64,000 nt of DNA from assembly GCA_002269645.1 (NCBI GenBank), contig NIVC01001548.1, positions 186,001-250,000 of the forward strand, written 5' to 3'. The translations under genes and the position numbers were made by a program. The notes under the pieces were generated by a model. The model ran no database searches. It was not told where the DNA came from and saw only the letters and a list, made by a program, of their open reading frames with translations. Shown here piece by piece: positions 130 to 62,842 of this stretch (positions within the stretch are counted from its first letter, which is position 1; the number at the start of each line of letters is the position of its first letter). This stretch comes from Macrostomum lignano (Eukaryota).

Positions 130-13232
<13,103 letters not shown>

Positions 13233-20497: not shown

Positions 20498-20580
20498 CTG
20501 AAACTTGTCAACAGCTTACGCAGACTACTTATACGAGTAGTAAGTGCTGTATTAAAAATTTCTAAAATCAATCTTTGCAG

Positions 20581-23500: not shown

Positions 23501-26500
23501 ATGGCGGACGAGGAGAACGGTGAGCAGACCGAAGCGACCGCCTCCTCCGCTGTCAATGGATACCGGTGAGCCGCAGCTTTCTGCAGTCAGCGCAATGGGC
23601 AGAATCGCCTCACCGCTGGTTTTGGACGATGTCGCCGAAGGCGTTGCGCCAGGGTGCGCGCAGCCCTCCTTAGCTCGTAGTAGCAAAACTCTCCTCGAAA
23701 TGTGCTCTCGGGTCTCTCTTAGCCGGTTTTCACAACTCTGCAATAGTCTGACGAGGCCTTAAAAAACTAATTGAAGTTACACAGACTGTCAACTGAATCG
23801 TATCAAGCTTGAGCAGTCTCCCGGCTCTCTGTTCCTCGGTTAGGAAATTTTTCCTCTTCGTTTCAGCCGGCCCGATCGAAGGCCCGCCCAGCCATCTGCC
23901 TGAGTCCTCATTATTTCCTAAGCGTGCCTTTTCTGCTTGCAGTCTGCGCTTCGTGCCGCTCCGATCATTAGCTTGGGGCTCCTGAGGCCTGGCTGCCCAC
24001 CTGCGCCTGCACCGTGCACTTTTGATGAGCCCCCATTGCCTAGCTATGCACAGCTGGACGATTTGAAACTCTGCTTTATCATTAATAGTCCTTGGCGATG
24101 CCTCAAGGACATCAAAACTGACTGGCCAACATCCTTGCCCCGTTTTCCATGACACAGCTGCCAGCTGCCCGCTGAGATGCCCTCCAGAGCTGAGTTCAAC
24201 GTGTGGAGCATCCTGAAAAACTGCATTGGCAAGGTAAAGTTGAGCAGACCTGGCGCCTAGCGGAATTTTTTATTTACGCGCGTACCCTCGTTAATTACGA
24301 GCGCGAGATAAACAGTATTTACCCTAGAACCAACAGGCCTACTATATTGTTCCTAAATTCAAAGTATTAAAATGAAATTCTTTGAAATGGTTCATTTTTC
24401 AAGTCCTGAAAGGGCTGGTTGGAAACGTGTCTGTAACTCTTGAAAGACGATTCCGCTTGGGCTTGTCGTGGGGTTCACGCTCGTGAGGGTCAACAGCACA
24501 ATAGTGTACATGCCTGGTGATGAGAAAGTCAGGGAAAGTTAGGAATGTCAGGAAAGTCAGAAAGTCAGAAAGTCAGGAATGTCAGGAGAGTCAGGAATGT
24601 CAGGAATATCAGGAAAGTGAGGAATGTCAGGAAAGTTAGGAATGTCAGGAAAGTCAGGAATGAGCCTCGCTTCATCATCCCCTCGATTTCAAACTTTTCC
24701 GAGCAAATCGCTTAAAAACTCCACTGAGAGTCTTGAACGCTGCTGGACAGCCAATCGTAGTAGCATTTTTGCCTGAGAAAGTCGAGCAGAAGCTGCTCTG
24801 CCGGCCCTCCTGCTGCTAAATTAACTTTCCATCGGCAGTCCGGCCCAGCGCCCTATTTAGATAGAGAGATTTGAGTCCCCCTGCCTGCCCTCTATTTCCC
24901 TGCTTCAGTCCGTCACGCCCGGGCACTCTGCACTGCTGCCGGCCGTCTCCTCTGTTCGTGTAATTTGCCCCCCCCAGCACTTGCGCGCACCCGGCCGGCC
25001 ACTAATTGCCCCGCCCGCGAAATTCCCCACCCCGCCCTCCAGCCCGTCCAGCTTCTCTCCTCCACCTCCTCTGAGCTGCGCTCGGACTTCAATCGCTGAG
25101 CCGGAACCGCGGGAAACTGCCGAGGTCACTGGCCATGCTGAGCACTATAGGTAGCGAAATTCCTGGGGAATTAATTCAAGCCGCGCAAAAAGGATCGATC
25201 CAGCCTCTCTGGCCCTCATCGATCTCAGGCTGAGGCCATTGCAAATTTTGGCCCCCAATTCTTCCCCAATATTTCTCTTAGCACCCTTGGGGACGCAGGC
25301 GCCGTTGCCAGGGGAAATCTCCTTCCCTGTCGGCTGCGCTAATCTCACTTCCAAGTCGCCCACAGGATCCTTGAATCAGCTGTCGAAGGAGAGCGAGTTG
25401 TACTTTTGTAGCCCGCCTGCTATTGGCTGCTTATGCGGAAAGGAACTTCTTTGTACTCGCATGCAGGAAGCGATCCAACGCACACCCAGTCTTATGGGCT
25501 TGTAGTCTGGCGGGACCGAGGTTCGATTCCGTTCGATTCTATAGGGGCATTGAGGGCCCATTGCCAGTGTGCACTGCCCGTCGATGAGAGAGTTGAAAAG
25601 GCCCACGTCCCGATTCGAACCCGCGACCTTCCCCTTCCCCCGTGCTCGCAGGAGCTGACCAAAATCGCCATGCCGGTGAACTTCAACGAGCCGCTGTCGT
25701 TTCTGCAGCGAATCTGCGAGTACCTGGAGTACTCGGAGCTGCTGTTCCAGGCTGAGCAGTGCGACTGCCCGACTGAGAGGCTGGAAGTAAGTTGGCTAAT
25801 TGTGCTCAGGTTTTCATTGGGCAACTTGAAGCTGGAAGATTGCGCCTTCTGAGCCGCCGCTGCACCTCCCGCAGCTCATTGCAGCATTCGCTGTGTCGGC
25901 CGTCTCCTCGAACTGGGACCGCCTGGGAAAGCCGTTCAACCCGCTGATGGGAGAGACCTATGAATTGGACAGGTGAGACTTGACAGGGTTAAGGATCTAG
26001 TGTGCTCTGTGCCTGGTTTTTGTGTCCCTTGGTTCGATTCACTGTACTCCTACTGGTCCTTGGTTTGATTCACTGTACTCCTATTCGGTCCTTGGTTCGA
26101 TTCACTGTACTCCTACTGGTCCTTGGTTCGATTCACTGTACTCCTATTCGGTCCTTGGTTCGATTCACTGTACTCCTACTGGTCCTTGGTTCGATTCACT
26201 GTACTCCTATTCGGTCCTTGGTTCGATTCACTGTACTCCTACTGGTCCTTGGTTCGATTCACTGTACTCCTATTCGGTCCTTGGTTCGATTCACTGTACT
26301 CCTACTGGTCCTTGGTTTGATTCACTGTACTCCTACTGGTCCTTGGTTTGATTCACTGTACTCCTACTGGTCCTTGATTTGATTCACTGTACTCCTACTG
26401 GTCCTTGGTTCGATTCACTGTACTCCTACTGGTCCTTGGTTTGATTCACTGTACTCCTACTGGTCCTTGGTTTGATTCACTGTACTCCTACTGGTCCTTG

Positions 26501-29500
26501 GTTCGATTCACTGTACTCCTACTGGTCCTTGGTTTGATTCACTGTACTCCTACTGGTCCTTGGTTTGATTCACTGTACTCCTACTGGTCCTTGGTTTGAT
26601 TCACTGTACTCCTACTGGTCCTTGGTTCGATTCACTGTACTCCTACTGGTCCTTGGTTTGATTCACTGTACTCCTACTGGTCGTTGGTTCGATTCACTGT
26701 ACTCCTACTGGTCCTTGGTTTGATTCACTGTACTCCTACTGGTCCTTGGTTCGATTCACTGTACTCCTACTGGTCCTTGGTTTGATTCACTGTACTCCTA
26801 CTGGTCCTTGGTTTGATTCACTGTACTCCTATTCGGTCCTTGGTTCGATTCACTGTACTTCTATTTGGTCCTTGGTTCGATTCCTTGTACTCCAACAGGT
26901 CCTTGGTTCGATTCCTTGTACTCCAACAGGTCCTTGGTTCGATTCCTTGTACTCCAACAGGTCCTTGGTTCGATTCCTTGTACTCCAACAGGTCCTTGGT
27001 TCGATTCCCTGTACTCCTATTTGGTCCTTGGTTCGATTCCCTATACTCCTACTGGTCCTTGGTTCGATTACCTGTAGTTCTAGAGGGTGAAGTACTTTTT
27101 TAGTCCTTTGTTTTTCACTACACTCACAGCGGTTTTTGGCCCGATCCGCGTTGCTCCCAGTGGTTAAATTGGTCTTTGGTCCGCGACACTGCCATGCCTT
27201 CCGCTATTGCCACAATCCATTTCACTGCAAAGCCAGTTTGGCAAGCGTTTCCCAGGGTGAATAAGCGCCAGTGCAGCGCCAGTGTAGTTGGACTGGACAC
27301 CCGCCCTTCTGCAGCCGCTTCTAGCAATGCCTGAAACAGCTGCGATCCATGCAGCCTTGCAAGTGGGCAAGGCGAGAGGGCCAGGAAACTGGATTCTGCT
27401 TTTCCATCTCTCTCTCTCCCTCTCGTTCTCCATCAGTGCTCAGGTGAGTCCGATGAGGACAATGGAGTAGTTTTAGTCAGTTCGCTTCCCTGGCCTGGGC
27501 TCACTGTGTGCTCAGTGGAGAGCACCAACAACGGAACCTCCTGCAGCCTGCATGGCCTCTGGCCTCATCTTAATAGTGCTTCCTGCAGCCTCCTCCTGCC
27601 GCTTTGCCGCTTGCAAAGAGTGAATTAAAACGGCCCCTATTTGATGGCAGGAGTACTGGTAGGTTGAAGTTGATTCAACCAGAATTCTAATAATATACAT
27701 GTATGGGCTTGCATGTATTCGTATTATGCACCTTGTATAAATAGCAGGAGAACTTTTGTGTGGGACTCAGGAGCTGTTGTTTGGTTTATGGCCATCTGGG
27801 ACTGCTGCTGGTGCTGTGTTGGGGGGGGGGAATTGGAATCGCATGCCTATTCAGTTTACTATAAATAAATTGATATGTTGGAGTTGGGAGAAAGCGCAGC
27901 ATCCAAACTGCAGCCAAGTTGAACATGGCATGGGTGACAGCTCAAGGTGAGAGGGACTGTCAAGAAGAGAAATGCGGGTTTAAGCAGCTATAGCCCTCTG
28001 TCTATCACTCCTAACCCTAGCCCTAGCTATAGCCCTCTGTCTATCACTAATAACCCTAGCCCTAGCTATAGCCCTCTTTCTATCACTCCTAACCCTAGCC
28101 CTAGCTATAGCCCTCTTTCTATCACTCCTAACCCTAGCCCTAGCTATAGCCCTCTGTCTATCACTCCTAACCCTAGCCCTAGCTATAGCCCTCTGTCTAT
28201 CACTCCTAACCCTAGCCCTAGCCCTAGCCCTAGCTATAGCCCTCTATCACTCCTAAGCCTAGCCCTAGCTATAGCCCTCTGTCTATCACTCCTAACCCTA
28301 GCCCTAGCCCAAGCCGTAACTCTAGCCCTAGCCCTAGCCCTAGCCCTAGCCCTAGCCCTAGCCCTAGCCCTAGCCCTAGCCCTAGCCCTAGCCGCCCTAG
28401 CCCTGGCCATAGCCATAGCCATAGCCTTAGCCCTAGCCCTAGCTCTAGCCCTGCCGTAATTACTTTTAGCGCTCTGCATGAAGCGTAAATAAAGCGTAAA
28501 GCGCATGAAGCATGTTAGTCGTAAATTTCTGCCGCAGAGTGTTAACAAAATTTTTCCCAAACGCATTTACTGCTTTTGGTCTCTGAAAGATAGAGTGACG
28601 AAGCTGAAGAAAAAAAATTGACTTTTAGAGTGCTTTCCCGAGCCAGAGTCTTGAGCGCCGAGAGGCTCGTTGGAGAGCCGGAACCGCTTCAGTGCGATGC
28701 GCCTATCGGGAGGCCGGGTTTGCTGAACCGACTGGGTGAGCGGCTGCACCTTTGCTTTGCCGAGGCCCCCTGCTGGGCTAATGGCCCGCAGTGGATCAAT
28801 AATTGATTGCTGGGGACTGGGAAAATGGAAGGAGGCCATGCGGCGCTGATGGCGGAGAGAAACTGCAGCTGGGACCGCCGAACAGATGATGGCATGTCGT
28901 GCGCTCACTTTCTACGTACTGGCGCTTTGGAGAGAGCCCAGTTTCTAAGCCTCATCAACTTCATTCTCGCTCTCAGATCAAATGTCTCCTTTTCTCTATA
29001 TTTCTGTCTCCCCAACCGGATAGAACAACGTGCTCATGCATGCATTTTGTTACAGTGCTTTAGTACAAGACCATTGTTCCTATGTACAAGACCATTGTTC
29101 CTATGTACAAGACCATTGTTCCTATGTACAAGACCATTGTTCCTATGTACAAGACCATTGTTACTATGTACAAGACCATTGTTCCTATGTACAAGACCAT
29201 TGTTCCTATGTACAAGACCATTGTTCCTATGTACAAGACCATTGTTCCTATGTACAAGACCCTTCCCAGTTTCTAGCACAGGATCATATGTGGACAGTCC
29301 GTTCTCCATGTAAGTTCTGTGGACCTGCAACCCTCAGAACCCACGAGCAGGGTGGCGGCTTCCGGATGGTGTGCGAGCAGGTCTCTCACCACCCGCCAAT
29401 CAGCGCCTTCCACGCCGAGTCCTCGGACAGCGCCTGGCGCTTCCACGGCAGCGTGACGCCCCGCCTCAGCTTCTGGGGAAAATCCGTGGAGGTCTGCCCG

Positions 29501-38345: not shown

Positions 38346-39389
38346 TCTCCTGCATCAATAAGGGGATTACCAGCTGCTTTCTCAGCTTCTCCCATAATTC
38401 TATAACTTTATTTGAATACCATTTAAAAATAGCATTCTTTGGTACATGCCATGTCAATGGTAAATACTTATTTAGTCTTCATTGATTTTTAAAGTATAAC
38501 TTTTACACTCGTAAAAGTAAAAAGCCTTTTTCCAAATGTTACTTTTTCTATACAAAAAATTATAAAAATGTCTTTACAGTTAATGCACATTAAATGATAA
38601 ATTGCAAATATTATAATTAAACACTGAAACATGGGCTCTCAAAACTACATTAGCACATTCCCAAAAACACATCAAAAAGGACAAAATTTGTACATTTTAA
38701 TTAGCCCAATCTAGAGGTACAAGTAAAACAAACTCTCAAAAATGAACTTAAACTAACCCTAATCAAACTAATAATAACTAATATGATTAAAACAAATAAC
38801 AAAAGTGAGATTATATTAATATTATGGAAAAAATATTTTGATACTCAATAGATTATATATAAGTCCTTAAAAATAGCTTTGTTGAACTCATTGTTAAAGT
38901 CATTGTTGCATTATTAAATAAAATAGTAAAAAAACACAAAAAGCATTTTAAAAGTCTGAGTTGACTGATTTGCAATTTTTTGTTTCACTTTTTTCATTTA
39001 TAAACAATTAGTTTTTAGACTTGAAGACCTTAGAATGGAAGGCTAATTTTTTTACTACTTACAAAACAGAAAGTATTCTATGTTTAAATTTTTATTTTAT
39101 TTAAAAAGACAAAAGATTTCTAAGGATTTCTAAGTTTTTCTAAAAAAAACTTGCAAAAATTCATACTAATTTAAAGTGCAAAGTTTGCCAGCAAACATCC
39201 ATATACTAAAAATGGTCTATCGTCTTTTTCTAAAAGTAAATATACTGCTAATTCCTTGTTGCAAAATAACCTTTAAGTTGTTTTCTTTCATTTAAATATC
39301 AACTTGAATAATATTAGTATATATAATATGGCTATATTTAGACTTGAATTTTTTGGGTAAAAAATGGTATCAGAAAATGTGAACCCGGC

Positions 39390-39712
39390 ATCTAAATCAA
39401 ATGCTTCCTATAGGCTTAAGAGACAATAAAGAACAATGAAATTATACTTATTATGTATTATTGTGGCATGTATGCAAGAAAAAGAATTTTCCAAATTGCT
39501 TCAGTTCAGTAGAAGCTAAGTAAAATACAATTTTCCAATCCTTATGGGAATTCTAATGTGTTATCCAGCTTCCAAATTAGATGCTTCCTATAGGCTTATG
39601 AGGCAACAAAGAACAATGAAATTATACTTAAATATGTATCATTGTGGCATATATGCAGGAAAAAAGAATTTTCCAAATTGCTTCAGTAGAAGCTGAGTAA
39701 AATGCATCTTTA
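39390..39712. repeat. Diverged ~180-bp-period tandem duplication in AT-rich DNA
   Basis: atgcttcctataggctta...aagaacaatgaaattatactta...gaattttccaaattgcttcagt...agaagct.agtaaaat occurs at ~39400-39535 and ~39580-39705. Confidence 0.85.
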
Positions 39713-42539
39713 CAATAATTTGTATGCTTAAATAATAAACTTATGTTGAATACAGTATTTATTGCAAATGAACTCTAAAAAATACATATTTTCAATAGTA
39801 ACAAAAGTGATGAACAAATAAACCCTCAAAAAGAATACTAAATGTGTTATAGCATTATAGAATGTAATATTATAAGATACTTAAAGTTAATAAATACAAT
39901 ATTAGAGTTTTTTTATCATTTTTATGAGTCATTTTAGTCATAATTTAATTTACCATTTTAACAAATCATTTTATTAAAAATAAGGCTATACAATTGAATA
40001 ATTTGTGCTTTTATAGATATTTCTAACTTTTATAAACTCAAAAAAAATTATTTTATAGCTTTATTGTTTTCAAACTGCCAAAAAAACGAATGTTAAAAAA
40101 ACTTGCTACTAATTTTTGGATTTTACCAGAAGCATTCTTAATCTTAGATAAATACTTTGGTGTATATAGCAAATAGATAGCAAGGAAGCAAGGAATTATA
40201 GGTATAGCACTATATAAATATTCTAATTATTTGCAAAAGAGTAGTAGGCCTATTCTTATATGTATTATAATTAAGCTGCTATGCAAATAAGCAGGTAATT
40301 GTTGGCATGGGACCATGGGAATAAGCACTGCCTATTAACTAGTGCAAAAACATAAATTTCATGTTTTATTTGTAAATAAAGTAAAAAAACAATTAAATTA
40401 TTATAGCACAAAAACACACAAAATAGAATAACAGTTCTTTAATATAACAAGAGGACTCGATTAATTTAAAAATACAAAACTTAGAAAGCAAGTTGTTTCA
40501 TTTTTTGGCTTTAATTAATATTCAACCCTAGCTTAGAAATATACTAAAATTTGAATGACAACAATATAGAAGATTCTAATAATCTTATCATGTCAATGAT
40601 TTATAATAGAAAATAGAAAAAAAAATAATAATAGAAAAAAAGCAAAGCAAACTGCACGAAACAATAAAGTTTTTTTAGCTAGAACCAAAACTGTAACTGT
40701 AAGCAAGCAAGACATTTACATACTAAATTATAGATGCAGTTTATACTACTCGTAATTCTAATTGTCGCATTACAACATAGCATCACGTGAAACGCTTACC
40801 GTTGTGTTAACCATGACGTGTGCTATTCTATTTGGGAAAAGCTGAAATCTCCCAGTTATTGAGTCAACGACCAACGTTTGAAAAAAGCGACCAGACCAGT
40901 ATTAAATTGTTATTAAATTTTTTCAAAGTCAGTTTTCGTGGAAAAAAGTATCGTTTAAACAAACTGTTTAATTAATATATCCTCATTTTAAACAGGGTTA
41001 AAAAAATTTAGTAAACTTTCTGCTGTTAGTTTTTTATTCCAAGACTAATCGTATTCGTTTTGTAAATTTTGACTACCGTTCAATTAAGGCGAAAGATTTC
41101 GTTAATGAAATTCAAAAGTCTTCGTCAACTAGTAAAATCCCACCACTGTTTCTAACCTAGGACGACTGAAGTAATCTATATATAATCCAATTAAGTAGTC
41201 CTTGTTTCTAACGAAGCCCTGCACGAAGCCCTTTTTCATTACTTCTATTTTTCTCTACCATGTCAACAATTTCACATATGGCAACGTCAGGGATCGACGA
41301 CAATAGAACAAACATATGCGAAATAAGCTAGTAAAAAGTAAAACAGTCTTCGTATGTAGGTGTTGTTAGTTGAGAATAAGCGTGCCTATTCGGCGCATAA
41401 AATATTGTATTGGGGGCTGGAGTGAAAGTGTTGATCAGCTCTTGAGAGCAATGGAGGAAATACAGCCAGAGCCCTCATATCGCGGAGCAAAACTGCAGCT
41501 TATGTCTGGAAAAACTCTAGCTTTTATCATTCGGTGTCGGTGCATAGCCAGCACTACGTAAAACTGACCCGATTCGTATTCTATGCGAGCTATTCTCCAC
41601 AAGAGAAGTTAAATAATAAGCATCTGTTGGTATTATTATTACACGTATAAACACGTACACGTACACGTAAATGTAAAGTGCTTGCCTTTTCAAAATAAAG
41701 TACATCGACATCGGATGCATGTACAAATCAGTAACTTCGCGTGGACGTCCGGAATATTTTACACATATATGAACGCTGGGCATCTACAAATAGTACTACG
41801 CTTACGCACGTACATGTATAAAAACTTTTTCGTCATAGAGAAGATCGCATATGCACAATTTTTCATGCCCATCTGATGTTTCAAACTACTACTCGTATAT
41901 ACTGCTTCGGAAAGGATCATTCATAAAGCTGAAAACACATAATTAGCTCGTGACCTAAGAAGCCATGCCTGCATTACATCGCTTCACCAAGGACTTATAA
42001 ATCCTTGGCTTCCATTTGTGTAAGACATGCGTACATGCGGACCATGCAGCATGGTTTATATATCGATCGTTGATACGTACGTTCGTATTAAAAATAGTTT
42101 AAGGATTTACATTTTACTGAGGAAATAGATCATAACTGTGGAAAGAAGACCAGCACCAGCAAAAAGTACAGTAATTTATACACAGGATCGCAGAAAATAG
42201 CCATGCCAGTATAATACCACACGATTAGACTGCAATAACGATAAATAAAAATATACGAGCTTATAAAGGGTATGAGACCAGTAAAAATGCACATAGAACA
42301 TTTTTGGGGCGAAGCATTATATACAGATTCCTTTCTGAAGCATAAAATCAGGCTATAATAGTGTTATTGTAATTCCACGCTGATCCTACCACGCGATAAA
42401 CTGCATGGCGAGTCAAAGTAAGATCGTTTACGCGTATCATATACTGGGCCAAAAGAGGCTACTTTACTCATTTTTATCTTGTTCTTGGCATACTGTGCAT
42501 GTGAATTCACGACACAGAATTGAGAGAGAATCGAGCAGC

Positions 42540-44980
42540 TCACGGATCGATCAGCAGAGGCTGGCTGGGATCGTCGCTAGACGTTACGGGAATCGGGACA
42601 GGAGGCTCGGAAGCTCCCGCAGCGCCCACCGCCTCCGTGGTGCCGGGTAGGTCTTCAGGCTGTACCGGCTCCGGCTCGCGCCACGGCCCGAGCTGCTCTT
42701 CCTTAAGTTCCTGTGTCAGCTCTTCGTCACTGTGCAAGTAGTTTCCAGGCGGACCGTCTCCTTCCATTGCTCGACGCAGCTTCTTAGGGTAGAATTCGAC
42801 CGGGAAGCCGGCCAGGTTGCGGCCTTTGCGCAAGTTGGAGTTGAGGATGTCGCTGAAGGGCAGGTCGTCAACGTCAGCTGCGTACGGGTCCATGAGGATG
42901 AAGGCAACTTTAAACCAGCCGAGGACGAACAGCAGTTTCACGAGGGCGAACACCGGCACGTAGAGGTCCGTCCAGTACTGCCGGACGTACGGGATCTGGC
43001 CGTCCGGTACTCCGCCATCCGGTGTGGTGGCGTTCAGCGGCCCGTGCCGCTCCAGAAGAGTCTGCGTGGCAACCACTTCGATAAAGAACCAGGTGTAGAC
43101 AGCGATTATCACTACCTGCAGTTGGAAAGATTTGCCAATCAGTTTCACCTGAGCTCTTTAGATGTCTCTAGCAATGTCAATAACTCCTAAATTTGAGCAC
43201 TGAGCAAGGTCTATATAACTATAATTGAGAAATGAGAAATATATAGAGCCGCTAGAAGTGTAGCAACTGGCTCACCTGAGTGTACACCAGAGGCAGGTTC
43301 TTGTTGGCGTATTTGTTGACGGTGCTGAGCAGGGAGGACCAATCGGAGAATGTTCCCAGCAAGAACCTGTAGGCTTCATATGTGCAGATGAAGCCCTCGG
43401 CCAGGGCTTGCTGTGCTACAGCCACTGCCCAGTGCATGGGCAGCTCGTACTCAATCGAGTAGGGCCCACGGGCCTGTCTGGCGCGTTCCTCGAACACGGC
43501 AATCTCGCTGGGTGTGATGATCTCGCCGTAGTTCTCCTGAATCACTGGGTCCTGGTTGAGCAGCACCAGATCTTGAATCAGCAGCTCGATCTGCTGCTCC
43601 CGGATGTCCTCGCGCTCGGAGACGATCCGCTGCAGAGCCGGGTAGAGGCGCTGACCGCCGTCCACGCGGAAGTGGCGCATGTCAAAGTTGCTGGAGTTCT
43701 CCAGGTGGTCGCGGCTGCGACGCATCCCCGGCACTGAGGACAGGTAGGGAGGGGAAATGGCAAGGAGTAGGATGGAACAGTAGGATGGAGAAGATAAGCT
43801 AAAAGGGAAAGGACTGGATAGGTAGAAAAAGGAAAAGACACAGAGCATATTCAACTTTTTAAGAATCTTCTCCCCCCAATTCAGCCTTGAAGCCGTACTC
43901 ACAGTGCGTCACCGTAAAGCGGTTGGTCTCGCTGATGAGGTTGCGGAGCATCCGGAATCGCTGCTTAATCTTTTCGCTCACCTTCCACATGTACAGCAGC
44001 CAGGCCAGGTTGAGGTAGCGCGACATTGTCAGCCTGATTTTCTCCGCCCTTCGCGGCTGCCCGCTGTTGAACACAATGGCCTCGATGCGCAGCGCCGTGG
44101 TTCCCATGGTTGGAATATCCTGCGGTTGGTCGGGTCTTCAATATAATCGATTCCCACTCATTCGCTCAATGAAGATGCTCAGCACTTTGTCTGTCACTGC
44201 CCTTTCTTTACCATAGACCGGCTACGCTACCTCGGGCCGAACCCGTCTATTGACGAGGTCTGCCAGCCCGACAGCATCCCACGGCTCATCCAGTTCCTTC
44301 GGGCGACAAGACAAGCCGCGTTCTTGCCTACGGAAGATCACGCTGCAGGACGGACCGCGATCACCCTGACCGGCCCCACGCCTTTGCCTGTCTGCGGGCC
44401 TTCAGGGCCTAGCGGAATGGGCGACCCTCGCCTCCCCGCTGTGTCTACGGACCGCCCTGCAGCTAAGTGAAAGTAAGTTCGCTCTTCCTTAACTAGTTTT
44501 ATCCTCTTTGCCAGTGCTTCTACCACTCCTTTCCTAAGACGTCAGGCCACTCACCAAGTATGACTTCCACCAGCGGTCCACCACAGTGCTAACGTAGAAT
44601 CCCAGCAGGAAGGTTACCGGAAGACTTGACTGCAGCTCAGCCACAGAGTGCACCAGTCGGGCAAATCTTTGCTGATGAACTTCGGGCAGCGCGTGCCGGT
44701 ACAGCAGGTTCACAATTGTGTACAGAGTAGCCCACAGCAGCACGTCTGGCCACACGAGACTGTAGACGCTGACCTTCCAGTGCAGCAGGTAGCGAATCAT
44801 CAGCGTGTAGTTCATCGGCTTCTGCTTGTTGTAGATGAAGGCAAACAGGCGGTGCCGCAGTCGCCGAATCTCCTTGTGCGCCTCGGCCGGAGTCTGCGGA
44901 TCGTCAGCCGACGACTGGCCGGGGCAGCAACGGCGGCGCAGCCGAGCGCAGAGGGACTCACCAGATGATGATAAGGACAT
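42540..44980 (-). CDS. BEST: Bestrophin-family chloride channel (divergent), 4 exons, ~558 aa
   Basis: Exons 44980-44555, 44119-43903, 43733-43276, 43115-42540, phase-consistent. Motifs LLHWKVSVYSL, LPVTFLLGFYVSTVVDRWW, RLTMSRYLNLA, LPLVYTQVVIIAVYTWF, LYVPVFALVKLLFVLGWFKVA, DPYAADVDDL. Confidence 0.9.
44161..44546 (+). mobile_element. 5'-truncated LINE 3' fragment in bestrophin intron 1
   Basis: The + frame EDAQHFVCHCPFFTIDRLRYLGPNPSIDEVCQPDSIPRLIQFLRAT...* (stop 44470) aligns with the end of the ORF2 at 4734-8552 ([46 protein letters not shown]). Candidate 7-bp TSD ccactca at 44154-44160 and 44547-44553; no obvious tail. Confidence 0.7.
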
Positions 44981-48034: not shown

Positions 48035-48158
48035 AGTCATTTCGCTTTAGTAAAATATACTAGAACGTTACAAAAAGACAGACAGACGGATAGATTAAAT
48101 ATTTAGTGAATTTAGTTTAAAAGCGAATTTTCCTAGTGTTTTCCTAGTCTAGACCAGT
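48035..48158. repeat. 124-bp direct repeat, left copy (candidate long TSD)
   Basis: agtcatttcgctttagt...ctagaccagt, identical by eye to 49433-49556. Confidence 0.95.
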
Positions 48159-49432
48159 TGTTGTTGTTAAACGGGGTGGGAAGCTACGGGGCTACCCGCG
48201 GATCAGCCCTGGGAGGGGCTCTGCCGCAGAGGGCACTACCAAGGGAACAGATACGACTGAACCCGAGATACCCAAACCAATTTAGTTGGAGAAGGGCGAG
48301 GGACCTCAAGTCTATGGTACAAAACACCGCCAAACCAACAGTGGAATCAGGGACGGTGCTAGGACCGAGTCCACCCAGGCCACCCCCCAGCAGACAGGTC
48401 CTCGGGAGTGCGCGAAAAAACAGAAATTGGAATTACTGAAGAGCCGTCCAAGAGCGGGGAAACCCAGAAGTCTTGGAAAAGGGCTAACTATTGGAGAGAG
48501 TCTGGGCAGCTATTTACCAAGAGCGATCCTATACAGTCCTATGCACCGGCCAACTGTAGGTCTCGAGCCTCAAGGCTTTTCACTACCCAGCTCTATTTTG
48601 GAGTGAGTCTGGAAGGCTTGTATCCGAGGGGGAGACTCCAGGCGTCCAGGTCCACCTCTATTGCTACCAACCCAAGGGCATCGCCTATCCAGCTCATCTT
48701 TGGGGGCCAGGCCAAGGGGTCGGGAGAAGAGGCACCCAGGGCAAGAGGACTCCGGACTCAGCCGGTTGTCCCCGGTTCGGGACGAACATCCTTCCCAGGA
48801 CACCAATCCACTGTCAGGATGAGAGCCAGAGACACGCAAGCAGGGACCTTACAGCAGGAGCCAGGAGATGGACCCGAGGACAGGGCAAGATGGACCGGGC
48901 AAGGGCAGAGCTCATAACTCCAAGAATTGGAAGGCTTCTGTTGGCCAGATAAAAGATTAAAAGAATAAAAAGCCACAAAGGCACAAAGCTAGGGATAAAA
49001 CAGCGCTGGGATGCCAGCCCAGAAAAAAAGAATGGCAGTGGGGAGGAGCACCATAGCCCTAAAGCAGGCAGCTTGCCGACCTGCAGCCCGGGTGCTCAGC
49101 CTCAGGGCTGGCATGCTACTGGGTCTACCGTACACCTTTGTGAATTGGTCGTTCTTTCCTGCAGGGCGGGTACGACCAGGGGGCTCAGTCCCGTCCTAGC
49201 CACACTGCAGTCCAGAGAACCTACTCACTCCGGGCACCACCCCCCCTAAACCAAGGCCGAGGGCCAAATAATTGGAATGTACACCTAAGAAAGATAGGGT
49301 TTATTTTTAGATGGGCACAGCCCCTCCGGGGCGGACCCTTAGAAATTGGCATAGCCAATCGGATTGCGCACAACCCTTAGACAAGCTACCAGAGAGGCAA
49401 CCAGGGTAAAAACAGTCAGAGACCGTCTTTAC
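48159..49432 (-). mobile_element. Non-autonomous retroposon, 1274 bp, SL-like 5' head, (AAC)n tail, 124-bp TSD
   Basis: A GC-richer insert between two identical 124-bp AT-rich repeats. The minus strand begins GTAAAGACGGTCTCTGACTG and ends ...ccccgtttaacaacaaca. No recognisable ORF. Confidence 0.8.
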
Positions 49433-49556
49433 AGTCATTTCGCTTTAGTAAAATATACTAGAACGTTACAAAAAGACAGACAGACGGATAGATTAAATAT
49501 TTAGTGAATTTAGTTTAAAAGCGAATTTTCCTAGTGTTTTCCTAGTCTAGACCAGT
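49433..49556. repeat. 124-bp direct repeat, right copy (candidate long TSD)
   Basis: Identical by eye to 48035-48158. Confidence 0.95.
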
Positions 49557-52984: not shown

Positions 52985-54600
52985 CAGAGGCGCCATAGTT
53001 AAGATAGAGGCACCATAGTTAAGATAGAGGCGCCATAGTTAAAATAGAGGCACCATAGTTAAGATAGAGGCGCCATAGTTAAGATAGAGGCGCCATAGTT
53101 AAGACAGAGGCGCCAAAGTTAAAATAGAGGCGCCATAGTTAAGACAGAGACGCCATAGTTAAGATAGAGGCGCCATAGTTAAGATAGAGGCACCATAGTT
53201 AAGATAGAGGCGCCATAGTTAGGATAGAGGCGCCATAGTTAAGACAGAGGCGCCAAAGTTAAAATAGAGGCGCCATAGTTAAGACAGAGACGCCATAGTT
53301 AAGACAGAGGCGCCGTAGTTAAAATAGAGGCACCATAGTTAAGATAGAGGCGCCATAGTTAAGATAGAGGCGCCATAGTTAAGACAGAGGCGCCAAAGTT
53401 AAAATAGAGGCGCCATAGTTAAGACAGAGACGCCATAGTTAAGACAGAGGCGCCATAGTTAAAATAGAGACGCCAAAGTTAAGATAGAGGCGCCATAGTT
53501 AAAATAGAGGCGCCATAGTTAAGACAGAGGCGCCATAGTTAAGATAGAGGCGCCATAGTTAAGATAGAGGCGCCATAGTTAAAATAGAGGCGCCATAGTT
53601 AAGATAGAGGCGCCATAGTTAAGATAGAGGCGCCATAGTTAAGATAGAGACGCCATAGTTAAGATAGAGACGCCAAAGTTAAGATAGAGACGCCAAAGTT
53701 AAAATAGAGGCGCCATAGTTAAGATAGAGGCGCCATAGTTAAGATAGAGGCGCCATAGTTAAGACAGAGGCGCCAAAGTTAAGATAGAGACGCCAAAGTT
53801 AAAATAGAGGCGCCATAGTTAAGATAGAGGCGCCATAGTTAAGATAGAGGCGCCATAGTTAAGACAGAGACGCCAAAGTTAAGATAGAGACGCCAAAGTT
53901 AAAATAGAGGCGCCATAGTTACGACAGAGGCGCCATAGTTAAGATAGAGGCGCCATAGTTAAGACAGAGACGCCAAAGTTAAGATAGAGACGCCAAAGTT
54001 AAAATAGAGACGCAAAAGTTAAGATAGAGGCGCCATAGTTAAGATAGAGGCGCCATAGTTAAGATAGAGACGCAAAAGTTAAGATAGAGGCGCCAAAGTT
54101 AAAATAGAGGCGCCATAGTTAAGATAAGACAGAGGCGCCATAGTTAAGATAGAGACGCCAAAGTTAAGATAGAGGCGCCATAGTTAAGATAGAGACGCCA
54201 TAGTTAAGACAGAGACGCCAAAGTTAAGATAGAGACGCCAAAGTTAGAATAGAGGCGCCATAGTTAAGATAGAGGCGCCATAGTTAAGACAGAGACGCCA
54301 AAGTTAAGATAGAGACGCCAAAGTTAAAATATAGGCGCCATAGTTAAGATAGAGACGCCATAGTTAAGATAGAGACGCCATAGTTAAGATAGAGGCGCCA
54401 TAGTTAAGATAGAGGCGCCATAGTTAAGATAGAGGCGCCATAGTTAAGACAGAGGCGCCAAAGTTAAGATAGAGGCGCCATAGTTAAGACAGAGGCACCA
54501 TAGTTAAGATAGAGGCGCCATAGTTAAGACAGAGACGCCATAGTTAAGACAGAGACGCCATAGTTAAGACAGAGACGCCATAGTTAAGATAGAGGCGCCG
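52985..54600. repeat. 20-bp minisatellite (gcgccatagttaagatagag), ~80 units
   Basis: Seen directly, ~650 bp upstream of the PLC ATG. Confidence 0.97.
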
Positions 54601-58800: not shown

Positions 58801-61800
58801 TCTGATCGCTTGATTTCCAGTCAGTTGAGAGTTCCGATCGCTTGATTTCCACTAGGATGAGAGTTCCGATCGCTTGATTTCCAGTCGGTTGAGAGTTTAG
58901 ATCACTTGATTTCGAGTTCCAGCAAGGTTTTCAACGCCCACTACAATAGTCATTGCGCTGTTATTGCATTGGACTGCTAATATTTATGTAAGCTTAGTTG
59001 GAGAACTTTCAATGTAACAGCGGAGCAGCATGCATAGCATGCTAATTACACATTTTTGACCTCCAGCGCTGGAACAGCTTCTATTAGAGAATAATTCAGT
59101 TCGAATCCATGGAATTCGGATGCTCGCCTCTCTTCTCTTCCGCAGTCATTAATTTCCCCATTTTCCCGCTTGCACCCCAACACGCTGATCGGCCGTGCGT
59201 GGTTAGCCGGGAAAATCGAAAAATCCCTAAGGATTTTCGCCTCGTTTTTTACTCTCAGCCCGGCAGCCTGTGGCTCAACTTTGGTAGGGATGCTTTTTTT
59301 TTAATTTAGCAGCCTAAAAGATAACGGCGGAGTGCGTTGGGATGATTTTAGCGATCGATCCCTAACCTGTCCATAGTATTCTACTGCCGACTCTTTGTGA
59401 GTAGTGTTTAGCGGATTCCAGCACTATTTAATGACTGAATTGTTGAATTCACCCATCCGCAGGAAGACAAGCTGGCCAACGCGCTGGTTGAACGCGGCGG
59501 CCCAATCGAGGGCCGGGTGGTGTCCATCTGCTCGGGCGCCGACCTCGTGAACGTGGTGTACACGCATATGATTGCGCAGGACAGCAAAACCGCAAATGTA
59601 AGTTTGTGAGCACCTGTGCTCTTCTTTGGTGAGCTGATTTTGTTGTTTTAGGAATGCTGCAGTATCCCTGTCCCTCAGTTGTGCTTGAGGCTGCAGCATC
59701 CCTGTCCCTCAGTTGTGCTTGAGGCTGCAGTATCCCTGTCCCTCAGTTGTGCTTGAGGCTGCAGCATCCCTGTCCCTCAGTTGTGCTTGAGGCTATAGCA
59801 TCCCTGTCCCTCAGTTGTGCTTGAGGCTGCAGCATCCCTGTCCCTCAGTTGTGCTTGAGGCTGCAGCATCCCTGTCCCTCAGTTGTGCTTGAGGCTGCAG
59901 CATCCCTGTATCTCAATTGATCTGCTCACACAGGCACAACTGCATACAAAAGTTATCGCTTCCTGAACCCGCAGGCTTGGATCCAGGACCTGAGGCCGCT
60001 GACTCACAACACAAAGGCCAGCAATGTGTGTCCAATGACGCAGCTGCGCAAACAGTGAGAGTCGGAGTTCCTTTTTCGTTTTGCCCTTTTCCTTCTCTTG
60101 TCCAGTTGAAGTTTTCTTCAAGCCAGCATTTTACCTGTCCTATTCCATGGTTAAAGTGCATGTCCTTACCAGCAGCTCCCCTTAGTTCTCCCCGAGTATG
60201 TTTGCTAATGTCTGCCGCGGGTCGGAGGTTCCCGGAATTGGGGATCCTCTCTGCCTCACCGCTTGTTTTCCCGTCTCAGAGTTGAGAGGCCGAGCCAGAG
60301 CGATTTGAAGAAGAGCAGCAGTGGAAAGGAAAATGGTTGCATGGGGTTTTGTCACGGCTGGTAAATATGGGCCTGTGTGTTGGTACATAAGTGCAACTCT
60401 GCAGCCTCGTGCAGTCTTGTGTGCACGGTTCCCATCGTTTGTTATATCAGTAATTTTTACTTGTGAATAATACAGCTGCAGCTGTACACCCAATCCAAGC
60501 CCAACCCACCCGATCCAAGCCCAACCCACCCGATCCAAGCCCAACCCACCCGATCCAAGCCCAACCCACCCGATCCAAGCCCAACCCACCCGATCCAAGC
60601 CCAACCCACCCGATCCAAGCCCAACCCACCCGATCCAAGCCCAACCCACCCGATCCAAGCCCAACCCACCCGATCCAAGCCCAACCCACCCGATCCAAGC
60701 CCAACCCACCCGATCCAAGCCCAACCCACCCGATCCAAGCCCAACCCACCCGATCCAAGCCCAACCCACCCGATCCAAGCCCAACCCACCCGATCCAAGC
60801 CCAACCCACCCGATCCAAGCCCAACCCACCCGATCCAAGCCCAACCCACCCGATCCAAGCCCAACCCACCCGATCCAAGCCCAACCCACCCGATCCAAGC
60901 CCAACCCACCCGATCCAAGCCCAACCCACCCGATCCAAGCCCAACCCACCCGATCCAAGCCCAACCCACCCGATCCAAGCCCAACCCACCCGATCCAAGC
61001 CCAACCCACCCGATCCAAGCCCAACCCACCCGATCCAAGCCCAACCCACCCGATCCAAGCCCAACCCACCCGATCCAAGCCCAACCCACCCGATCCAAGC
61101 CCAACCCACCCGATCCAAGCCCAACCCACCCGATCCAAGCCCAACCCACCCGATCCAAGCCCAACCCACCCGATCCAAGCCCAACCCACCCGATCCAAGC
61201 CCAACCCACCCGATCCAAGCCCAACCCACCCGATCCAAGCCCAACCCACCCGATCCAAGCCCAACCCACCCGATCCAAGCCCAACCCACCCGATCCAAGC
61301 CCAACCCACCCGATCCAAGCCCAACCCACCCGATCCAAGCCCAACCCACCCGATCCCAGCCCAACCCACACAATCCAAACCCGACCAACACAATCCAAGC
61401 CTGACCCACCTGCCGCACTTGCAGCTGGATGAAGCTGTGCGTCTCAGTGAACGCCAACAACTGCATCCCGGTGCGCGCAATCAGCAAGACCTTCGCCTCC
61501 GGCAAGACGGAAAAAATCATCTTTCAGACGCTGAAGGATCTCGGTCTGCCGTCTGCCAAGGTGGGGGAGGGAAGAGAGAGAATAAAACAGAGAGGAGAGA
61601 CAATACAAGGGAGGAGAGACAATACAAGAGAGGAGAGACAATACAAGAGAGGAGAGACAATGCAAGAGAGGAGAGACAATGCAAGAGAGGAGAGACAATA
61701 CAAGAGAGGAGAGACAATACAAGAGGGGAGAGACAATACACGAGGGGAGAGACAATGCAAGAGAGGAAAGACAATGCAAGAGAGGAGAGACAATGCAAGA

Positions 61801-62842
61801 GAGGAGAGACAATGCAAGAGAGGAGAGACAATACACGAGGGGAGAGACAATACAAGAGGGGAGAGACAATGCAAGAGAGGAGAGACAATGCAAGAGAGGA
61901 GAGACAATACACGAGGGGAGAGACAATACAAGAGAGGAGAGACAATACAAGAGGGGAGAGACAATGCAAGAGAGGAGAGACAATGCAAGAGGGGAGAGAC
62001 AATACAAGAGAGGAGAGACAATGCAAGAGGGGAGAGACAATACACGAGGGGAGAGACAATACAAGAGGGGAGAGACAATACAAGAGGGGAGAGACAATGC
62101 AAGAGAGGAGAGACAATGCAAGAGGGGAGAGACAATACAAGAGAGGAGAGACAATGCAAGAGGGGAGAGACAATACACGAGGGGAGAGACAATGCAAGAG
62201 AGGAGAGACAATGCAAGAGAGGAAAGACAATGCAAGAGAGGAGAGACAATGCAAGAGAGGAGAGACAATGCAAGAGAGGAGAGACAATACAAGAGAGGAG
62301 AGACAATACAAGAGAGGAGAGACAATGCAAGAGAGGAGAGACAATGCAAGAGGAGAGCTGGGAAGAGTGGGGATTAGATCTGAGCGGAGATGTGTACCAA
62401 AAGTTCATGCAGCTTTGGGACTAGGCGTGTTTTCTTTGTGAAGTGGTAGATCGCAGGACGACTTGAAGGTCTCAGCATATTCAATGAAAGATTGACAGCT
62501 GAGCAATGGGTAGGGCTTTGTCGACGAGCAAGCGAACTCAGACTTTGCTTTGCCTGTTTTTCTCCCTAACAGAACGACGAAATCGTAAAGGCGGACTTCA
62601 CCTTCGAGAAGTTCTACGAGCTGTACCACCGCATCTGCCCGCGCCAGGACATCGAAGACCTCTTCAACGAGCTGTGCGGCGGCGCTGGTGGCAGCGTCGT
62701 CTCTCAGGACAAGATGATGGAGTTTCTCAACGTCACCAGCGAGATCCCCGGCTCAACGAGATTCTGTACCCCTTTGCCAACAAGCTGACCATTGAGAACA
62801 TTCTTAAGTGCTACGAGCCAAATAAGGAGAACCAGGAGAATC
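55250..62842 (+). CDS. PLCB4: Phospholipase C-beta (PLCB4/NorpA type), first 7 coding exons (PH plus EF hands); 1-nt frameshift at ~62734; continues off the right edge
   Basis: Exons 55250-55372 (..[20 protein letters not shown]), 55462-55542 ([14 protein letters not shown]), 56998-57057 ([10 protein letters not shown]), 59463-59597 (CSGADLVNV), 59975-60054 ([11 protein letters not shown]), 61425-61560 ([21 protein letters not shown]), 62573-62842 ([24 protein letters not shown] / [13 protein letters not shown]). YEFNW and TFASGKTEK are PLCB4/NorpA-like. Confidence 0.92.
55547..55860. repeat. 20-bp repeat (tgtctgcctgtttgtcttag) grading into (CTGT)n
   Basis: Starts right after the GTGAGC donor at 55543. 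Confidence 0.95.
56390..56860. repeat. 54-bp minisatellite (gttatcatttagtttgactgtgctcgaatatgtaagaattggatggatgccaca), ~8.5 units
   Basis: Seen directly in PLC intron 2. Confidence 0.97.
58675..58915. repeat. 32-bp repeat with two alternating variants (gagagttccgatcgcttgatttcca-gtcagtt / -ctaggat)
   Basis: Seen directly in PLC intron 3. Confidence 0.9.
59655..59908. repeat. 34-bp minisatellite (gctgcagcatccctgtccctcagttgtgcttgag), ~7.5 units
   Basis: Seen directly in PLC intron 4. Confidence 0.95.
60489..61400. repeat. 20-bp minisatellite (ccaacccacccgatccaagc), >40 essentially identical units
   Basis: Seen directly in PLC intron 5, ending just before the acceptor at 61424. Confidence 0.98.
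61585..62355. repeat. 19-bp purine-rich minisatellite (agaggagagacaat(a/g)caag), ~40 units
   Basis: Seen directly in PLC intron 6. Confidence 0.97.

What the first reader, a model, noticed from the sequence alone, without database searches (positions are those of the whole stretch)
48035..49556. Spliced-leader-headed non-coding retroposon with a 124-bp target-site duplication
Seen: a 1274-bp insert flanked by two identical 124-bp direct repeats (48035-48158, 49433-49556). On the minus strand it ends in an (AAC)n tail and begins, exactly at the repeat boundary, with GTAAAGACGGTCTCTGACTG. A CCAAT box (~49345) and a GC box (~49328) lie just inside the 5' end, and there is no ORF. Knowledge (recalled, must be verified): the Macrostomum lignano SL starts CCGTAAAGACGGTCTCTTACTG, a 19/20 match to the head, after which the sequences diverge. 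NeSL (nematodes) and CRE/SLACS (trypanosomes) retrotransposons target SL RNA genes, and the NeSL-related rotifer R9 element makes ~126-bp TSDs. Inference: this is an off-target copy of a non-autonomous element mobilised by an SL-gene-targeting (NeSL/R9-like) retrotransposon and transcribed from an SL promoter, so it carries the 5' half of the SL. Alternatively it is a new SL-derived SINE class.
Basis: partly seen in the sequence, partly recalled or inferred. Interest (0 to 1): 0.85.

Follow-up and report, generated by a model that had tools for sequence, protein, structure and literature searches.

The report
Flatworm retroposon with spliced-leader hairpin head
A young, non-coding 1.27-kb retroposed insert in the flatworm Macrostomum lignano is flanked by an unusually long 124-bp target duplication and starts with a 27-base hairpin built from the first bases of the worm's trans-splicing leader; with only this one copy to study, how it acquired that head is unresolved.

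Summary
Two 100% identical 124-bp direct repeats (48035-48158, 49433-49556) flank a 1274-bp GC-rich insert in AT-rich DNA. On the minus strand the insert ends in (AAC)3A and begins GTAAAGACGGTCTCTGACTG. That is 19/20 to the published Macrostomum spliced leader (SL) and to a real SL RNA gene I recovered from a metagenome contig. The window is M. lignano. The insert has no coding capacity and no Pfam or Rfam match.

New here: only the first 15 bases are SL (15/15). Bases 16-27 are the complement of bases 1-12 with two G·U pairs. The terminus is therefore a 12-bp hairpin (-12.1 kcal/mol; chance about 5e-6). The first 120 nt are structured on the sense strand only.

Best reading: a recent target-primed reverse transcription (TPRT) insertion of a non-autonomous retroposon whose source RNA already carried the SL-derived hairpin. 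The nick sites do not resemble the SL locus. Described NeSL elements make target deletions. R9 is grouped with the R2 clade. A (CAA)n tail with an A-initial target-site duplication (TSD) is the RTE-type signature. No other copy could be retrieved, so family-level claims remain open.

The parts
49433..49556 (.). Upstream (5'-side, in element orientation) copy of the 124-bp target-site duplication. The inferred first (priming) nick on the window + strand lies between 49556 and 49557, at ...CCAGT^ACTGAC.
   Evidence: It is 100% identical to 48035-48158. It is AT-rich like the flanks (31% GC) and occurs nowhere else in the window.
49418..49432 (-). SL-identical 15-mer GTAAAGACGGTCTCT, element nt 1-15. 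It equals SL nt 4-18 in the GCCGTAAAG... numbering.
   Evidence: It is 15/15 identical to the published SL and to SL gene DNA L007:618-632.
49406..49432 (-). 5'-terminal hairpin GUAAAGACGGUC-UCU-GACUGUUUUUAC: 12 bp, two G·U pairs, 3-nt loop.
   Evidence: MFE is -12.1 kcal/mol, z = -5.7, with 0 of 200 shuffles as stable. The antisense strand folds at -4.3 and the genuine SL over the same window at -1.3; P(chance) is about 5e-6.
49313..49432 (-). Structured 5' domain of five consecutive hairpins.
   Evidence: MFE is -48.8 kcal/mol, z = -3.4, 0 of 200 shuffles. The structure is sense-specific: z = -3.1 against -0.8 for the antisense strand. No other 120-nt window of the element except the 3'-terminal one reaches a z of magnitude 2.
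48169..49312 (-). Non-coding body of the insert.
   Evidence: There are no Pfam hits, no Rfam hits and no protein homologues. It shows no similarity to the window's LINE. GC is 55% and CpG o/e 0.47.
48159..48168 (-). 3' microsatellite tail AACAACAACA. The first two TSD bases (AC) complete a fourth AAC unit, giving a 2-nt microhomology with the priming end.
   Evidence: Read directly from the sequence. The tail type matches the (CAA)n, A-initial TSD pattern in PMC6007223.
48035..48158 (.). Downstream (3'-side, in element orientation) copy of the 124-bp target-site duplication. The inferred second nick on the window minus strand lies between 48035 and 48034, at ...AATGACT^TTTGTCG.

Best explanation
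This is a recent insertion, by target-primed reverse transcription, of a non-autonomous, non-coding RNA of about 1.27 kb into AT-rich intergenic DNA of Macrostomum lignano.

Shown:
- The insert has a defined 5' end and a short (AAC)n 3' tail.
- It is bounded by a perfect 124-bp duplication of host sequence.
- Its first 15 bases equal the 5' end of the SL.
- Bases 16-27 pair back onto bases 1-12.
- The 5' 120 nt fold strongly on the sense strand only.

Inferred:
- A LINE-encoded endonuclease and reverse transcriptase nicked the window's + strand at CCAGT^ACTG. The GT-3' end paired with the AAC tail of the RNA and primed cDNA synthesis.
- The second nick fell 124 bp away on the other strand, and fill-in made the TSD.
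- The SL-derived hairpin was already part of the source RNA. It is an inherited 5' module, probably first acquired when a reverse transcriptase ran onto the 5' end of an SL-bearing RNA, as proposed for snRNA-headed SINEU elements. It was not made during this insertion.
- The partner LINE recognises a microsatellite-tailed 3' end. An RTE-like partner is the best guess from the tail.
- The hairpin plausibly stabilises or marks the 5' end, or carries an SL-gene start-site element. That function is conjecture.
For: TSD and boundaries.

Composition contrast between insert and TSD/flanks.

Non-coding.

Orientation: the microsatellite lies at one end only, and folding is sense-specific.

SL identity.

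Hairpin significance.

Hairpin predates the insertion: it carries two G·U (that is, imperfect) positions, while 124/124 TSD identity bounds post-insertion change at roughly 1% per copy. About 0.14 changes would be expected in a 12-nt arm, so two are unlikely (P about 0.01; my calculation). A snap-back made at the time of insertion would also be a perfect complement.

Both departures from a perfect complement are C-to-U and preserve RNA pairing.

The head is followed immediately by the only strongly structured part of the element. That fits a genuine functional 5' end better than a random truncation point.

Tail and TSD-start pattern: PMC6007223.

Precedent for snRNA-derived 5' additions that become heritable: PMC4494074.

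Organism.
Against: - Only one copy is available. No second copy was found in the window or in any searchable collection, so 'family' and 'inherited head' are unproven.
- The head lacks the first 1-3 bases of the assembled SLs (GCC/CC/C), which no model explains.
- RTE-clade TSDs reported in PMC6007223 and PMC1291365 are about 10-13 bp, not 124.
- No partner LINE sharing the 3' end was found.
- A perfect 124-bp duplication is also what some assembly errors would produce.
Confidence: 0.5

Rival explanations
1. Copy-specific chimera. During this one insertion the reverse transcriptase, copying an unrelated (possibly 5'-truncated) RNA, reached a stretch (GACUGUUUUUAC) to which the 5' end of an abundant SL-bearing RNA was annealed. 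It crossed onto that RNA and ran off its 5' end, adding SL nt 18 down to 4. This is analogous to U6-L1 and other snRNA chimeric retrocopies.
For: It explains the exact 15/15 SL identity ending near the SL 5' terminus. It explains the G at position 16 as simply the first base of the other RNA. It explains G·U pairs, because two independent RNAs pair. SL is carried by about 30% of mRNAs (PMC8629364), so it is the commonest 5' sequence in the cell. Template switching onto snRNAs is documented (references and discussion in PMC4494074).
Against: It needs a 12-bp anti-SL stretch in the template. My estimate is about 4e-6 per site, or about 2% for a 5-kb RNA. The junction sits directly beside the only strongly structured, sense-specific domain of the insert, which looks like a real 5' end and not a random switch point. 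The missing GCC of the SL is not explained.
Confidence: 0.25
2. The family normally lives inside SL RNA genes, inserted around SL nt 18-23, and is co-transcribed from the SL promoter, as SLACS/CRE are in trypanosomatids. Its RNA therefore starts with SL bases, and this copy is an off-target insertion. The machinery is a site-specific RLE-type LINE that nicks about 124 bp apart.
For: The head starts within 1-3 nt of the SL 5' end. The long, precise TSD is reminiscent of R9. CRE and R4 elements make duplications. A NeSL-clade lineage (R5/LIN) that retargets small-RNA and rRNA genes exists in flatworms (PMC4640811). With a head of about 20 nt and a 124-bp TSD, insertion in an SL gene would duplicate about 100 bp of promoter plus the start site. 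That would leave a complete SL gene downstream, an attractive rationale (inference).
Against: No SL-gene-resident copy has been seen. The one SL gene recovered (L007) is intact and solitary, and the literature reports only about 8 SL genes, a small target pool. The nick sites and TSD show no similarity to the SL locus. Described NeSL elements cause deletions, and R9 is R2-clade. The tail is RTE-like. Simple read-through does not predict that the bases after the SL part would be its complement. The SL-differing G would need a variant master copy.
Confidence: 0.17
3. Not a transposition event. Either it is an assembly artefact that duplicated 124 bp around a heterozygous insertion, or it is filler DNA captured during repair of a staggered break. 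A solo LTR or a DNA transposon would be further alternatives.
For: 100% identity of the repeats is compatible with an artefact. There is a single copy only.
Against: The insert has a microsatellite tail at one end and a defined structured terminus at the other. There are no terminal inverted repeats. The ends are not TG...CA, and no 4-6-bp TSD lies outside the 124-mers (flanks ACAAA versus ACTGA). The 124-mer has host composition. The 2-nt tail/target microhomology is typical of TPRT.
Confidence: 0.06

Closest known systems
SINEU (crocodilian SINEs with U1/U2 snRNA-derived heads; PMC4494074)
   Same: Both are non-autonomous retroposons whose 5' end derives from a pol II small nuclear RNA. The 5' addition is thought to arise by reverse-transcriptase template switching and then be inherited. 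In both, how the element is transcribed is unclear.
   Different: The source RNA here is the spliced-leader RNA, not U1 or U2. Only 15 nt are derived, and they are folded back into a hairpin. The element is 1274 bp (SINEU is under 500 bp). Family status is unproven.
SLACS/CRE1/CZAR (CRE clade, trypanosomatids) and NeSL-1 (nematodes): SL-gene-specific LINEs
   Same: All are linked to the spliced-leader sequence. CRE elements make target duplications (PMC3636483). From my own knowledge, SLACS sits after SL nt 11 with a 49-bp TSD and is transcribed from the SL start site.
   Different: Those are autonomous RLE-type LINEs found inside SL genes. This insert is non-coding, lies in unrelated AT-rich DNA, and its target does not resemble the SL locus. 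NeSL elements delete target bases.
R9 of bdelloid rotifers (Gladyshev & Arkhipova 2009, cited in PMC3636483)
   Same: It makes an exceptionally long TSD. The figure of about 126 bp is from my own knowledge; the paper's title is confirmed.
   Different: R9 is 28S rDNA-specific, autonomous and related to the R2 clade, not NeSL. No sequence or structural link to this insert was found.
RTE-clade LINEs and their SINEs (PMC6007223, PMC1291365)
   Same: They have short microsatellite 3' ends, often (CAA)n in animals, with the TSD starting with A. They are frequent sources of non-autonomous partners, including in flatworms.
   Different: Reported TSDs are about 10-13 bp. No RTE element or shared 3' end was available to test.
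U6-L1 and other snRNA chimeric retrocopies (Buzdin 2002, cited in PMC4494074)
   Same: The 5' part is copied from a small nuclear RNA after a template switch, it is co-linear with an unrelated 3' part, and one TSD surrounds both.
   Different: Those usually carry the whole snRNA. Here there are only 15 nt, and they are paired to the adjoining sequence.
SVA / Sadhu-type long non-coding pol II retroposons (discussed in PMC4494074)
   Same: They are about 1-2 kb, non-coding, mobilised in trans by a LINE, and lack a pol III promoter. This insert has a T5 run at nt 21-25 that would stop pol III.
   Different: They have different composition and origin, and none has an SL head.

Membership tests
Non-LTR (TPRT) retroposon insertion | Target-site duplication of host sequence directly abutting both ends | tested here: met
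   124/124 identical; host-like composition; unique in the window.
Non-LTR (TPRT) retroposon insertion | A-rich or microsatellite 3' tail at one end only, with no LTRs or TIRs | tested here: met
   (AAC)3A lies at the minus-strand 3' end. The termini are not inverted repeats and not TG...CA.
Non-LTR (TPRT) retroposon insertion | Multiple dispersed copies with independent TSDs (a family) | not testable with these tools
   There is no second copy in the window. M. lignano genomic DNA is not retrievable. Scans gave 0 hits.
Non-autonomous element | No RT/EN coding capacity | tested here: met
SL-gene-targeting LINEs (CRE/SLACS, NeSL) | Copies reside at a fixed site inside SL RNA genes | not testable with these tools
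   Only one SL gene (L007) could be recovered, and it is uninterrupted.
SL-gene-targeting LINEs (CRE/SLACS, NeSL) | The target, or an off-target site, resembles the SL-gene recognition sequence | tested here: not met
   Both nick sites and the TSD, aligned locally against the SL gene with 135 nt of upstream and about 30 nt of downstream flank (L007 481-760), scored no better than shuffles (63-417 of 500 shuffles scored as well).
SL-gene-targeting LINEs (CRE/SLACS, NeSL) | RLE-type RT ORF, or a 3' end shared with such an element | tested here: inconclusive
   There is no ORF in the insert. The only LINE in the window is APE-RT-RNaseH with an unrelated 3' end. The rest of the genome was not searchable.
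NeSL clade specifically | Target-site deletion on insertion (all described members, PMC3636483) | tested here: not met
   A 124-bp duplication is present.
R9 / R2-clade long-TSD elements | Insertion at a specific 28S rDNA site | tested here: not met
   The target is AT-rich intergenic DNA. Rfam finds no rRNA in the window.
Classical SINE (tRNA/7SL/5S head) | Head derived from a pol III gene with an internal promoter; length under about 700 bp | tested here: not met
   No tRNA was found and there are no Rfam hits. A T5 run lies at nt 21-25. The length is 1274 bp.
snRNA-headed retroposons (SINEU-like) | The 5' end is co-linear with the 5' end of a pol II small nuclear RNA | tested here: met
   There is 15/15 identity to SL nt 4-18 at the exact terminus. 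The derived stretch is much shorter than in SINEU.
RTE-mobilised retroposons | (CAA)n-type tail with an A-initial TSD; 3' end shared with an RTE LINE; TSD of about 10-13 bp | tested here: inconclusive
   The tail and the first TSD base fit. The TSD length does not fit. The shared 3' end is not testable.
Solo LTR | TG...CA ends and a 4-6-bp TSD | tested here: not met
   The ends are GT...CA on the minus strand and TG...AC on the plus strand. No short TSD lies outside the 124-mers.

The most novel reading that the evidence does not exclude
M. lignano harbours an active retroposon family whose normal home is the SL RNA gene. Nicks about 124 bp apart would duplicate the SL promoter and start site. 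The upstream copy would then drive the element, whose RNA starts with SL bases that fold back into a protective or recognition hairpin. The downstream copy would regenerate an intact SL gene. If so, this would be the first SL-associated mobile element in flatworms, and a 'harmless' insertion strategy that explains very long TSDs. A weaker version is also possible: a dispersed family that uses a 15-nt SL module in a 5' hairpin as a portable start-site or cap-recognition signal, which would be a new class of small-RNA-headed retroposon.
Probability: 0.17. Interest if true: 0.85.

Novelty: new variant of a known kind. Interest (0 to 1): 0.55.

Why it matters
Retroposons need a way to carry or find a promoter and to define their 5' end. 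Known solutions are pol III gene heads (SINEs), internal LINE promoters, co-transcription with a target gene (R2, SLACS) and, rarely, snRNA heads (SINEU).

An element that starts with the first bases of the spliced leader, locked into a hairpin, would add the SL RNA to that list. It would also link mobile DNA to the trans-splicing system of a regeneration model organism.

The 124-bp TSD is among the longest for any retroposon. If it is reproducible across copies, it would say something about the nicking geometry of the partner enzyme.

If the head instead proves specific to this copy, the locus is still a clean natural example of reverse-transcriptase template switching onto an SL-bearing RNA. 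It would also be a useful marker of very recent retrotransposition in M. lignano.

Tried and rejected
- Other copies in the window: blastn of the insert and the 124-mer found only themselves, and self-blast found no other dispersed repeat pair.
- Other copies elsewhere. Protein-level searches with the insert's longest frame found nothing, or one spurious low-complexity hit. Exact 18- to 25-mer scans of viral contigs and of prokaryotic genome contigs found nothing.
It returned six chance matches and one genuine SL RNA gene, L007.
- Retrieving M. lignano DNA through window proteins failed. The LINE ORF is not on record. A bestrophin exon gave no hits. The M. lignano UniRef hits of the LINE have no contigs attached.
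- SL RNA mimicry beyond the head is rejected. No similarity to the SL intron part was found. There is no Sm-like U-run between hairpins, and the fold differs from the SL RNA fold.
- Ribozymes, tRNA and other known RNAs are rejected. An HDV-like topology is incompatible with nt 1-12 pairing to nt 16-27.
- A 3' end shared with the window's LINE is rejected: the alignment is no better than shuffles (279 of 1000).
- Plus-strand orientation of the element is rejected. It would put the microsatellite at the 5' end, and the antisense RNA folds far worse (-31.8 versus -48.8 kcal/mol over 120 nt).
- Snap-back synthesis at the time of this insertion is rejected, because the hairpin is not a perfect complement while the TSD is perfect.
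- CCAAT and GC boxes as promoter evidence get little weight. Such short motifs are expected by chance, and here they are palindrome arms.
Full report
**Observation**

The sequence is as described. Positions 48035-48158 and 49433-49556 are a 124-nt direct repeat at 100% identity. They bracket a 1274-bp insert, 48159-49432. A self-comparison of the whole window, after setting aside its many minisatellite arrays, finds no other dispersed direct repeat of this kind. Neither the insert nor the 124-mer occurs elsewhere in the window.

The insert is 55% GC. The 124-mer is 31% GC and the surrounding DNA 38%. The repeat therefore has the composition of host DNA, not of the insert, as expected of a target-site duplication (TSD).

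Read on the minus strand, the structure is: flank ...AAGTCAGT | 124-mer ACTGGTCTAG...GCGAAATGACT | GTAAAGACGGTCTCTGACTGTTTTTACCC ... CCCACCCCGTTTAACAACAACA | the same 124-mer | TTTGTCGCG... The tail is short, (AAC)3A, and the first two bases of the TSD complete a fourth AAC unit. There are no terminal inverted repeats and no TG...CA ends. No short duplication lies outside the 124-mers.

**Organism**

The window carries eukaryotic exons (bestrophin, GWT1, FHA/PHD) and an APE-RT-RNaseH LINE ORF. That ORF matches UniRef proteins of Macrostomum lignano at 95-100% identity. The window is therefore M. lignano or something extremely close to it.

**The spliced-leader match**

PMC5173321 gives CCGTAAAGACGGTCTCTTACTGCGAAGACTCAATTTATTGCATG. 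PMC8629364 uses a 35-nt core of it and describes a 109-bp SL RNA gene present about eight times. The supplement of PMC10468722 gives the same SL for M. cliftonense (starting GCCG...) and M. hystrix (starting CG...), both with T where the insert has G.

This is contig L007...TTTGCCGTAAAGACGGTCTCTTACTGCGAAGACTCAATTTATTGCATG|GTAAGACACCGG..., with the expected stem-loops. Blastn of the insert plus flanks against L007 finds only element nt 1-20 = L007 618-637, 19/20, and nothing else. The head is thus truly SL-derived, and it begins 1-3 nt inside the assembled SL 5' ends.

**What the head really is**

Folding shows that element nt 1-27 form a perfect 12-bp hairpin, GUAAAGACGGUC-UCU-GACUGUUUUUAC, with two G·U pairs. 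Its energy is -12.1 kcal/mol, z = -5.7, and none of 200 shuffles is as stable.

The antisense strand folds to only -4.3 kcal/mol. The genuine SL over the same 27-nt window folds to -1.3. With the SL 15-mer fixed, the chance that twelve random bases of the element's composition pair completely is about 5e-6.

The SL-identical part is therefore nt 1-15 (15/15). The 'mismatch' G16 is the partner of C12. ACTG (17-20) matches the SL only because the SL has a latent 4-bp self-complementarity there. The 'divergent' TTTTTAC is the complement of GTAAAGA.

The return arm is the exact reverse complement of the SL arm except for two C-to-U changes, and both preserve RNA pairing.

The hairpin heads a run of five hairpins in nt 1-120 (-48.8 kcal/mol, z = -3.4, 0 of 200 shuffles). 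In a sliding-window scan this is the only strongly structured part of the element. It is structured on the sense strand only (z = -3.1 against -0.8).

**Coding and known RNAs**

Sense-strand open frames are 93 codons or fewer. The longest open frame is 184 codons on the antisense strand. It has no relative in the word-indexed search. In the exhaustive HMMER search of 1.84 billion representatives it has only one spurious hit, to a low-complexity repeat protein.

The ten ORFs tested gave no meaningful Pfam match; the only hit, TRIQK at E = 0.025 and 15 bits, is well below its 27-bit cut-off. Rfam gives nothing at gathering thresholds and only noise at E up to 10. ARAGORN finds no tRNA. A T5 run at nt 21-25 argues against pol III transcription.

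**Mechanism**

The anatomy fits target-primed reverse transcription (TPRT).

1. The window's + strand was nicked at ...CCAGT^ACTGAC (49556|49557).
2. Its GT-3' end can pair with the AC of the RNA's AAC tail, and cDNA synthesis then proceeded into the element.
3. The other strand was nicked 124 bp away, at ...AATGACT^TTTGTCG, and fill-in produced the TSD.

These steps are inferred from the junctions, not observed.

The hairpin was most likely already in the source RNA. The TSD is 124/124 identical, which bounds post-insertion divergence at roughly 1% per copy. Two changes in a 12-nt arm after insertion would then have a probability of about 0.01. A snap-back made during this insertion would be a perfect complement.

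**Three models for the head**

(a) It is an inherited 5' module of a non-autonomous retroposon. It would have been acquired once by reverse-transcriptase run-on onto an SL-bearing RNA and then kept, as proposed for the U1/U2 heads of SINEU (PMC4494074).

(b) It is a chimera specific to this copy. An SL-bearing RNA annealed to an anti-SL-like stretch of the template, and the enzyme crossed over and ran off the SL 5' end. This neatly explains the exact 15-mer, the G16 and the G·U pairs. It needs a rare 12-bp complementarity (my estimate is about 2% for a 5-kb RNA). It also leaves the adjacent structured domain as a coincidence.

I rank these (a) about 0.5, (b) about 0.25 and (c) about 0.17. The remainder covers artefact and non-TPRT origins.

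**Tests bearing on the NeSL/R9 idea**

- Neither nick site (±20 nt) nor the TSD aligns with the SL gene and its flanks better than shuffled controls (63-417 of 500 shuffles score as well).
- The only LINE in the window is APE-type, ends in (GTAA)n, has a TSD of about 10-11 bp (GGGTTGCCTG), and shares nothing with the insert's 3' end.
- According to PMC3636483, all described NeSL elements produce target deletions, whereas CRE, R4, R8 and R9 produce duplications. That paper groups R9 with the R2 clade, so 'NeSL-related R9' is inaccurate.
- PMC6007223 reports that animal RTE-clade LINEs and their SINEs commonly end in (CAA)n and have TSDs starting with A. That matches this insert, although their TSDs are about 10-13 bp.
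With a head of about 20 nt, a 124-bp TSD in an SL gene would duplicate the promoter and regenerate a whole SL gene.
- The one SL gene recovered (L007) is intact and solitary, with a protein-coding gene 1.1 kb downstream.

**Limits**

No second copy of the element could be obtained by any route. The routes tried were protein searches with window ORFs, exact-pattern scans of viral and prokaryotic collections, and the M. lignano UniRef hits, which carry no contigs.

All family-level statements are therefore untested. These include copy number, the constancy of the head, the typical TSD length, the partner LINE, and residence in SL genes. An assembly artefact cannot be formally excluded without reads.

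**Verdict**

The object is a recent, non-coding, TPRT-type retroposed insert in M. lignano with an exceptionally long TSD and an SL-derived 5' terminus.

The new and most interesting fact is that this terminus is a 27-nt hairpin made of SL nt 4-18 and its complement, at the head of a sense-specific structured domain. The SL-gene-targeting, NeSL/R9-like mechanism is not supported by anything testable here and is mildly disfavoured. An snRNA-headed (SINEU-like) retroposon, possibly RTE-mobilised, is the closest known analogue.

I rate it a new variant of a known kind. Interest is moderate to high, pending a genome-wide census.

Noticed in passing
window 4645-9060 (minus strand): A 5'-truncated APE-RT-RNaseH LINE with an intact 1272-aa ORF2 (4734-8552). 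It ends in (GTAA)n preceded by CCCCCCGT and is flanked by a TSD of about 10-11 bp, GGGTTGCCTG. It is 95-100% identical to many M. lignano UniRef 'proteins', several of which are evidently gene models fused to this LINE.
   Followed up: partly
L007 (metagenome contig Ga0302322_100095745), 615-730: An intact Macrostomum-type SL RNA gene (SL exon, GTAAG donor, two downstream stem-loops) sits in an environmental metagenome contig. It is solitary, not in a tandem array, with a (CAGG)n run upstream and an intronless 380-codon ORF (1785-2923) 1.1 kb downstream that I did not identify. GCCGTAAA occurs twice just upstream of or at the start of the SL.
   Followed up: partly
window, throughout (e.g. 2267-4448, 10256-11508, 11990-12970, 18911-20498, 26027-27076, 52986-54599, 60487-62352): The density of long minisatellite arrays (periods 17-55 bp, many 1-2 kb long) is extraordinary. 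Several create long spurious ORFs with Pfam noise such as Collagen, DotD and Lamprin.
   Followed up: no
window 42540-44980 (minus strand): Three ORF segments of a bestrophin-family gene lie here. Its 5' end is about 3 kb from the insert. The C-terminal exon has no detectable relatives in the protein collection.
   Followed up: partly
window 48159-49432: The insert is strand-asymmetric (sense strand T 28%, A 17%) and CpG-depleted (o/e 0.47, against 0.72 in the flanks). All three antisense frames have fewer stop codons than composition predicts (28 against about 50), and no frame stands out. This is unexplained.
   Followed up: partly
window 49413-49419 and 49430-49436 (minus strand): The heptamer TGACTGT occurs twice 20 nt apart: once across the TSD/element junction (aaTGACT|GTaaag) and once at element nt 15-21. 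In addition, the empty-site sequence at the second nick (AATGACT|TTTG) resembles element nt 13-24 (TCTGACTGTTTT). This may be chance, or a microhomology involved in forming the 5' junction.
   Followed up: no
window 39376-39716 and 13795-13949: These are the only other dispersed repeats found: a 165-bp tandem duplication at 84% identity, and a 47-bp inverted repeat at 89%.
   Followed up: no
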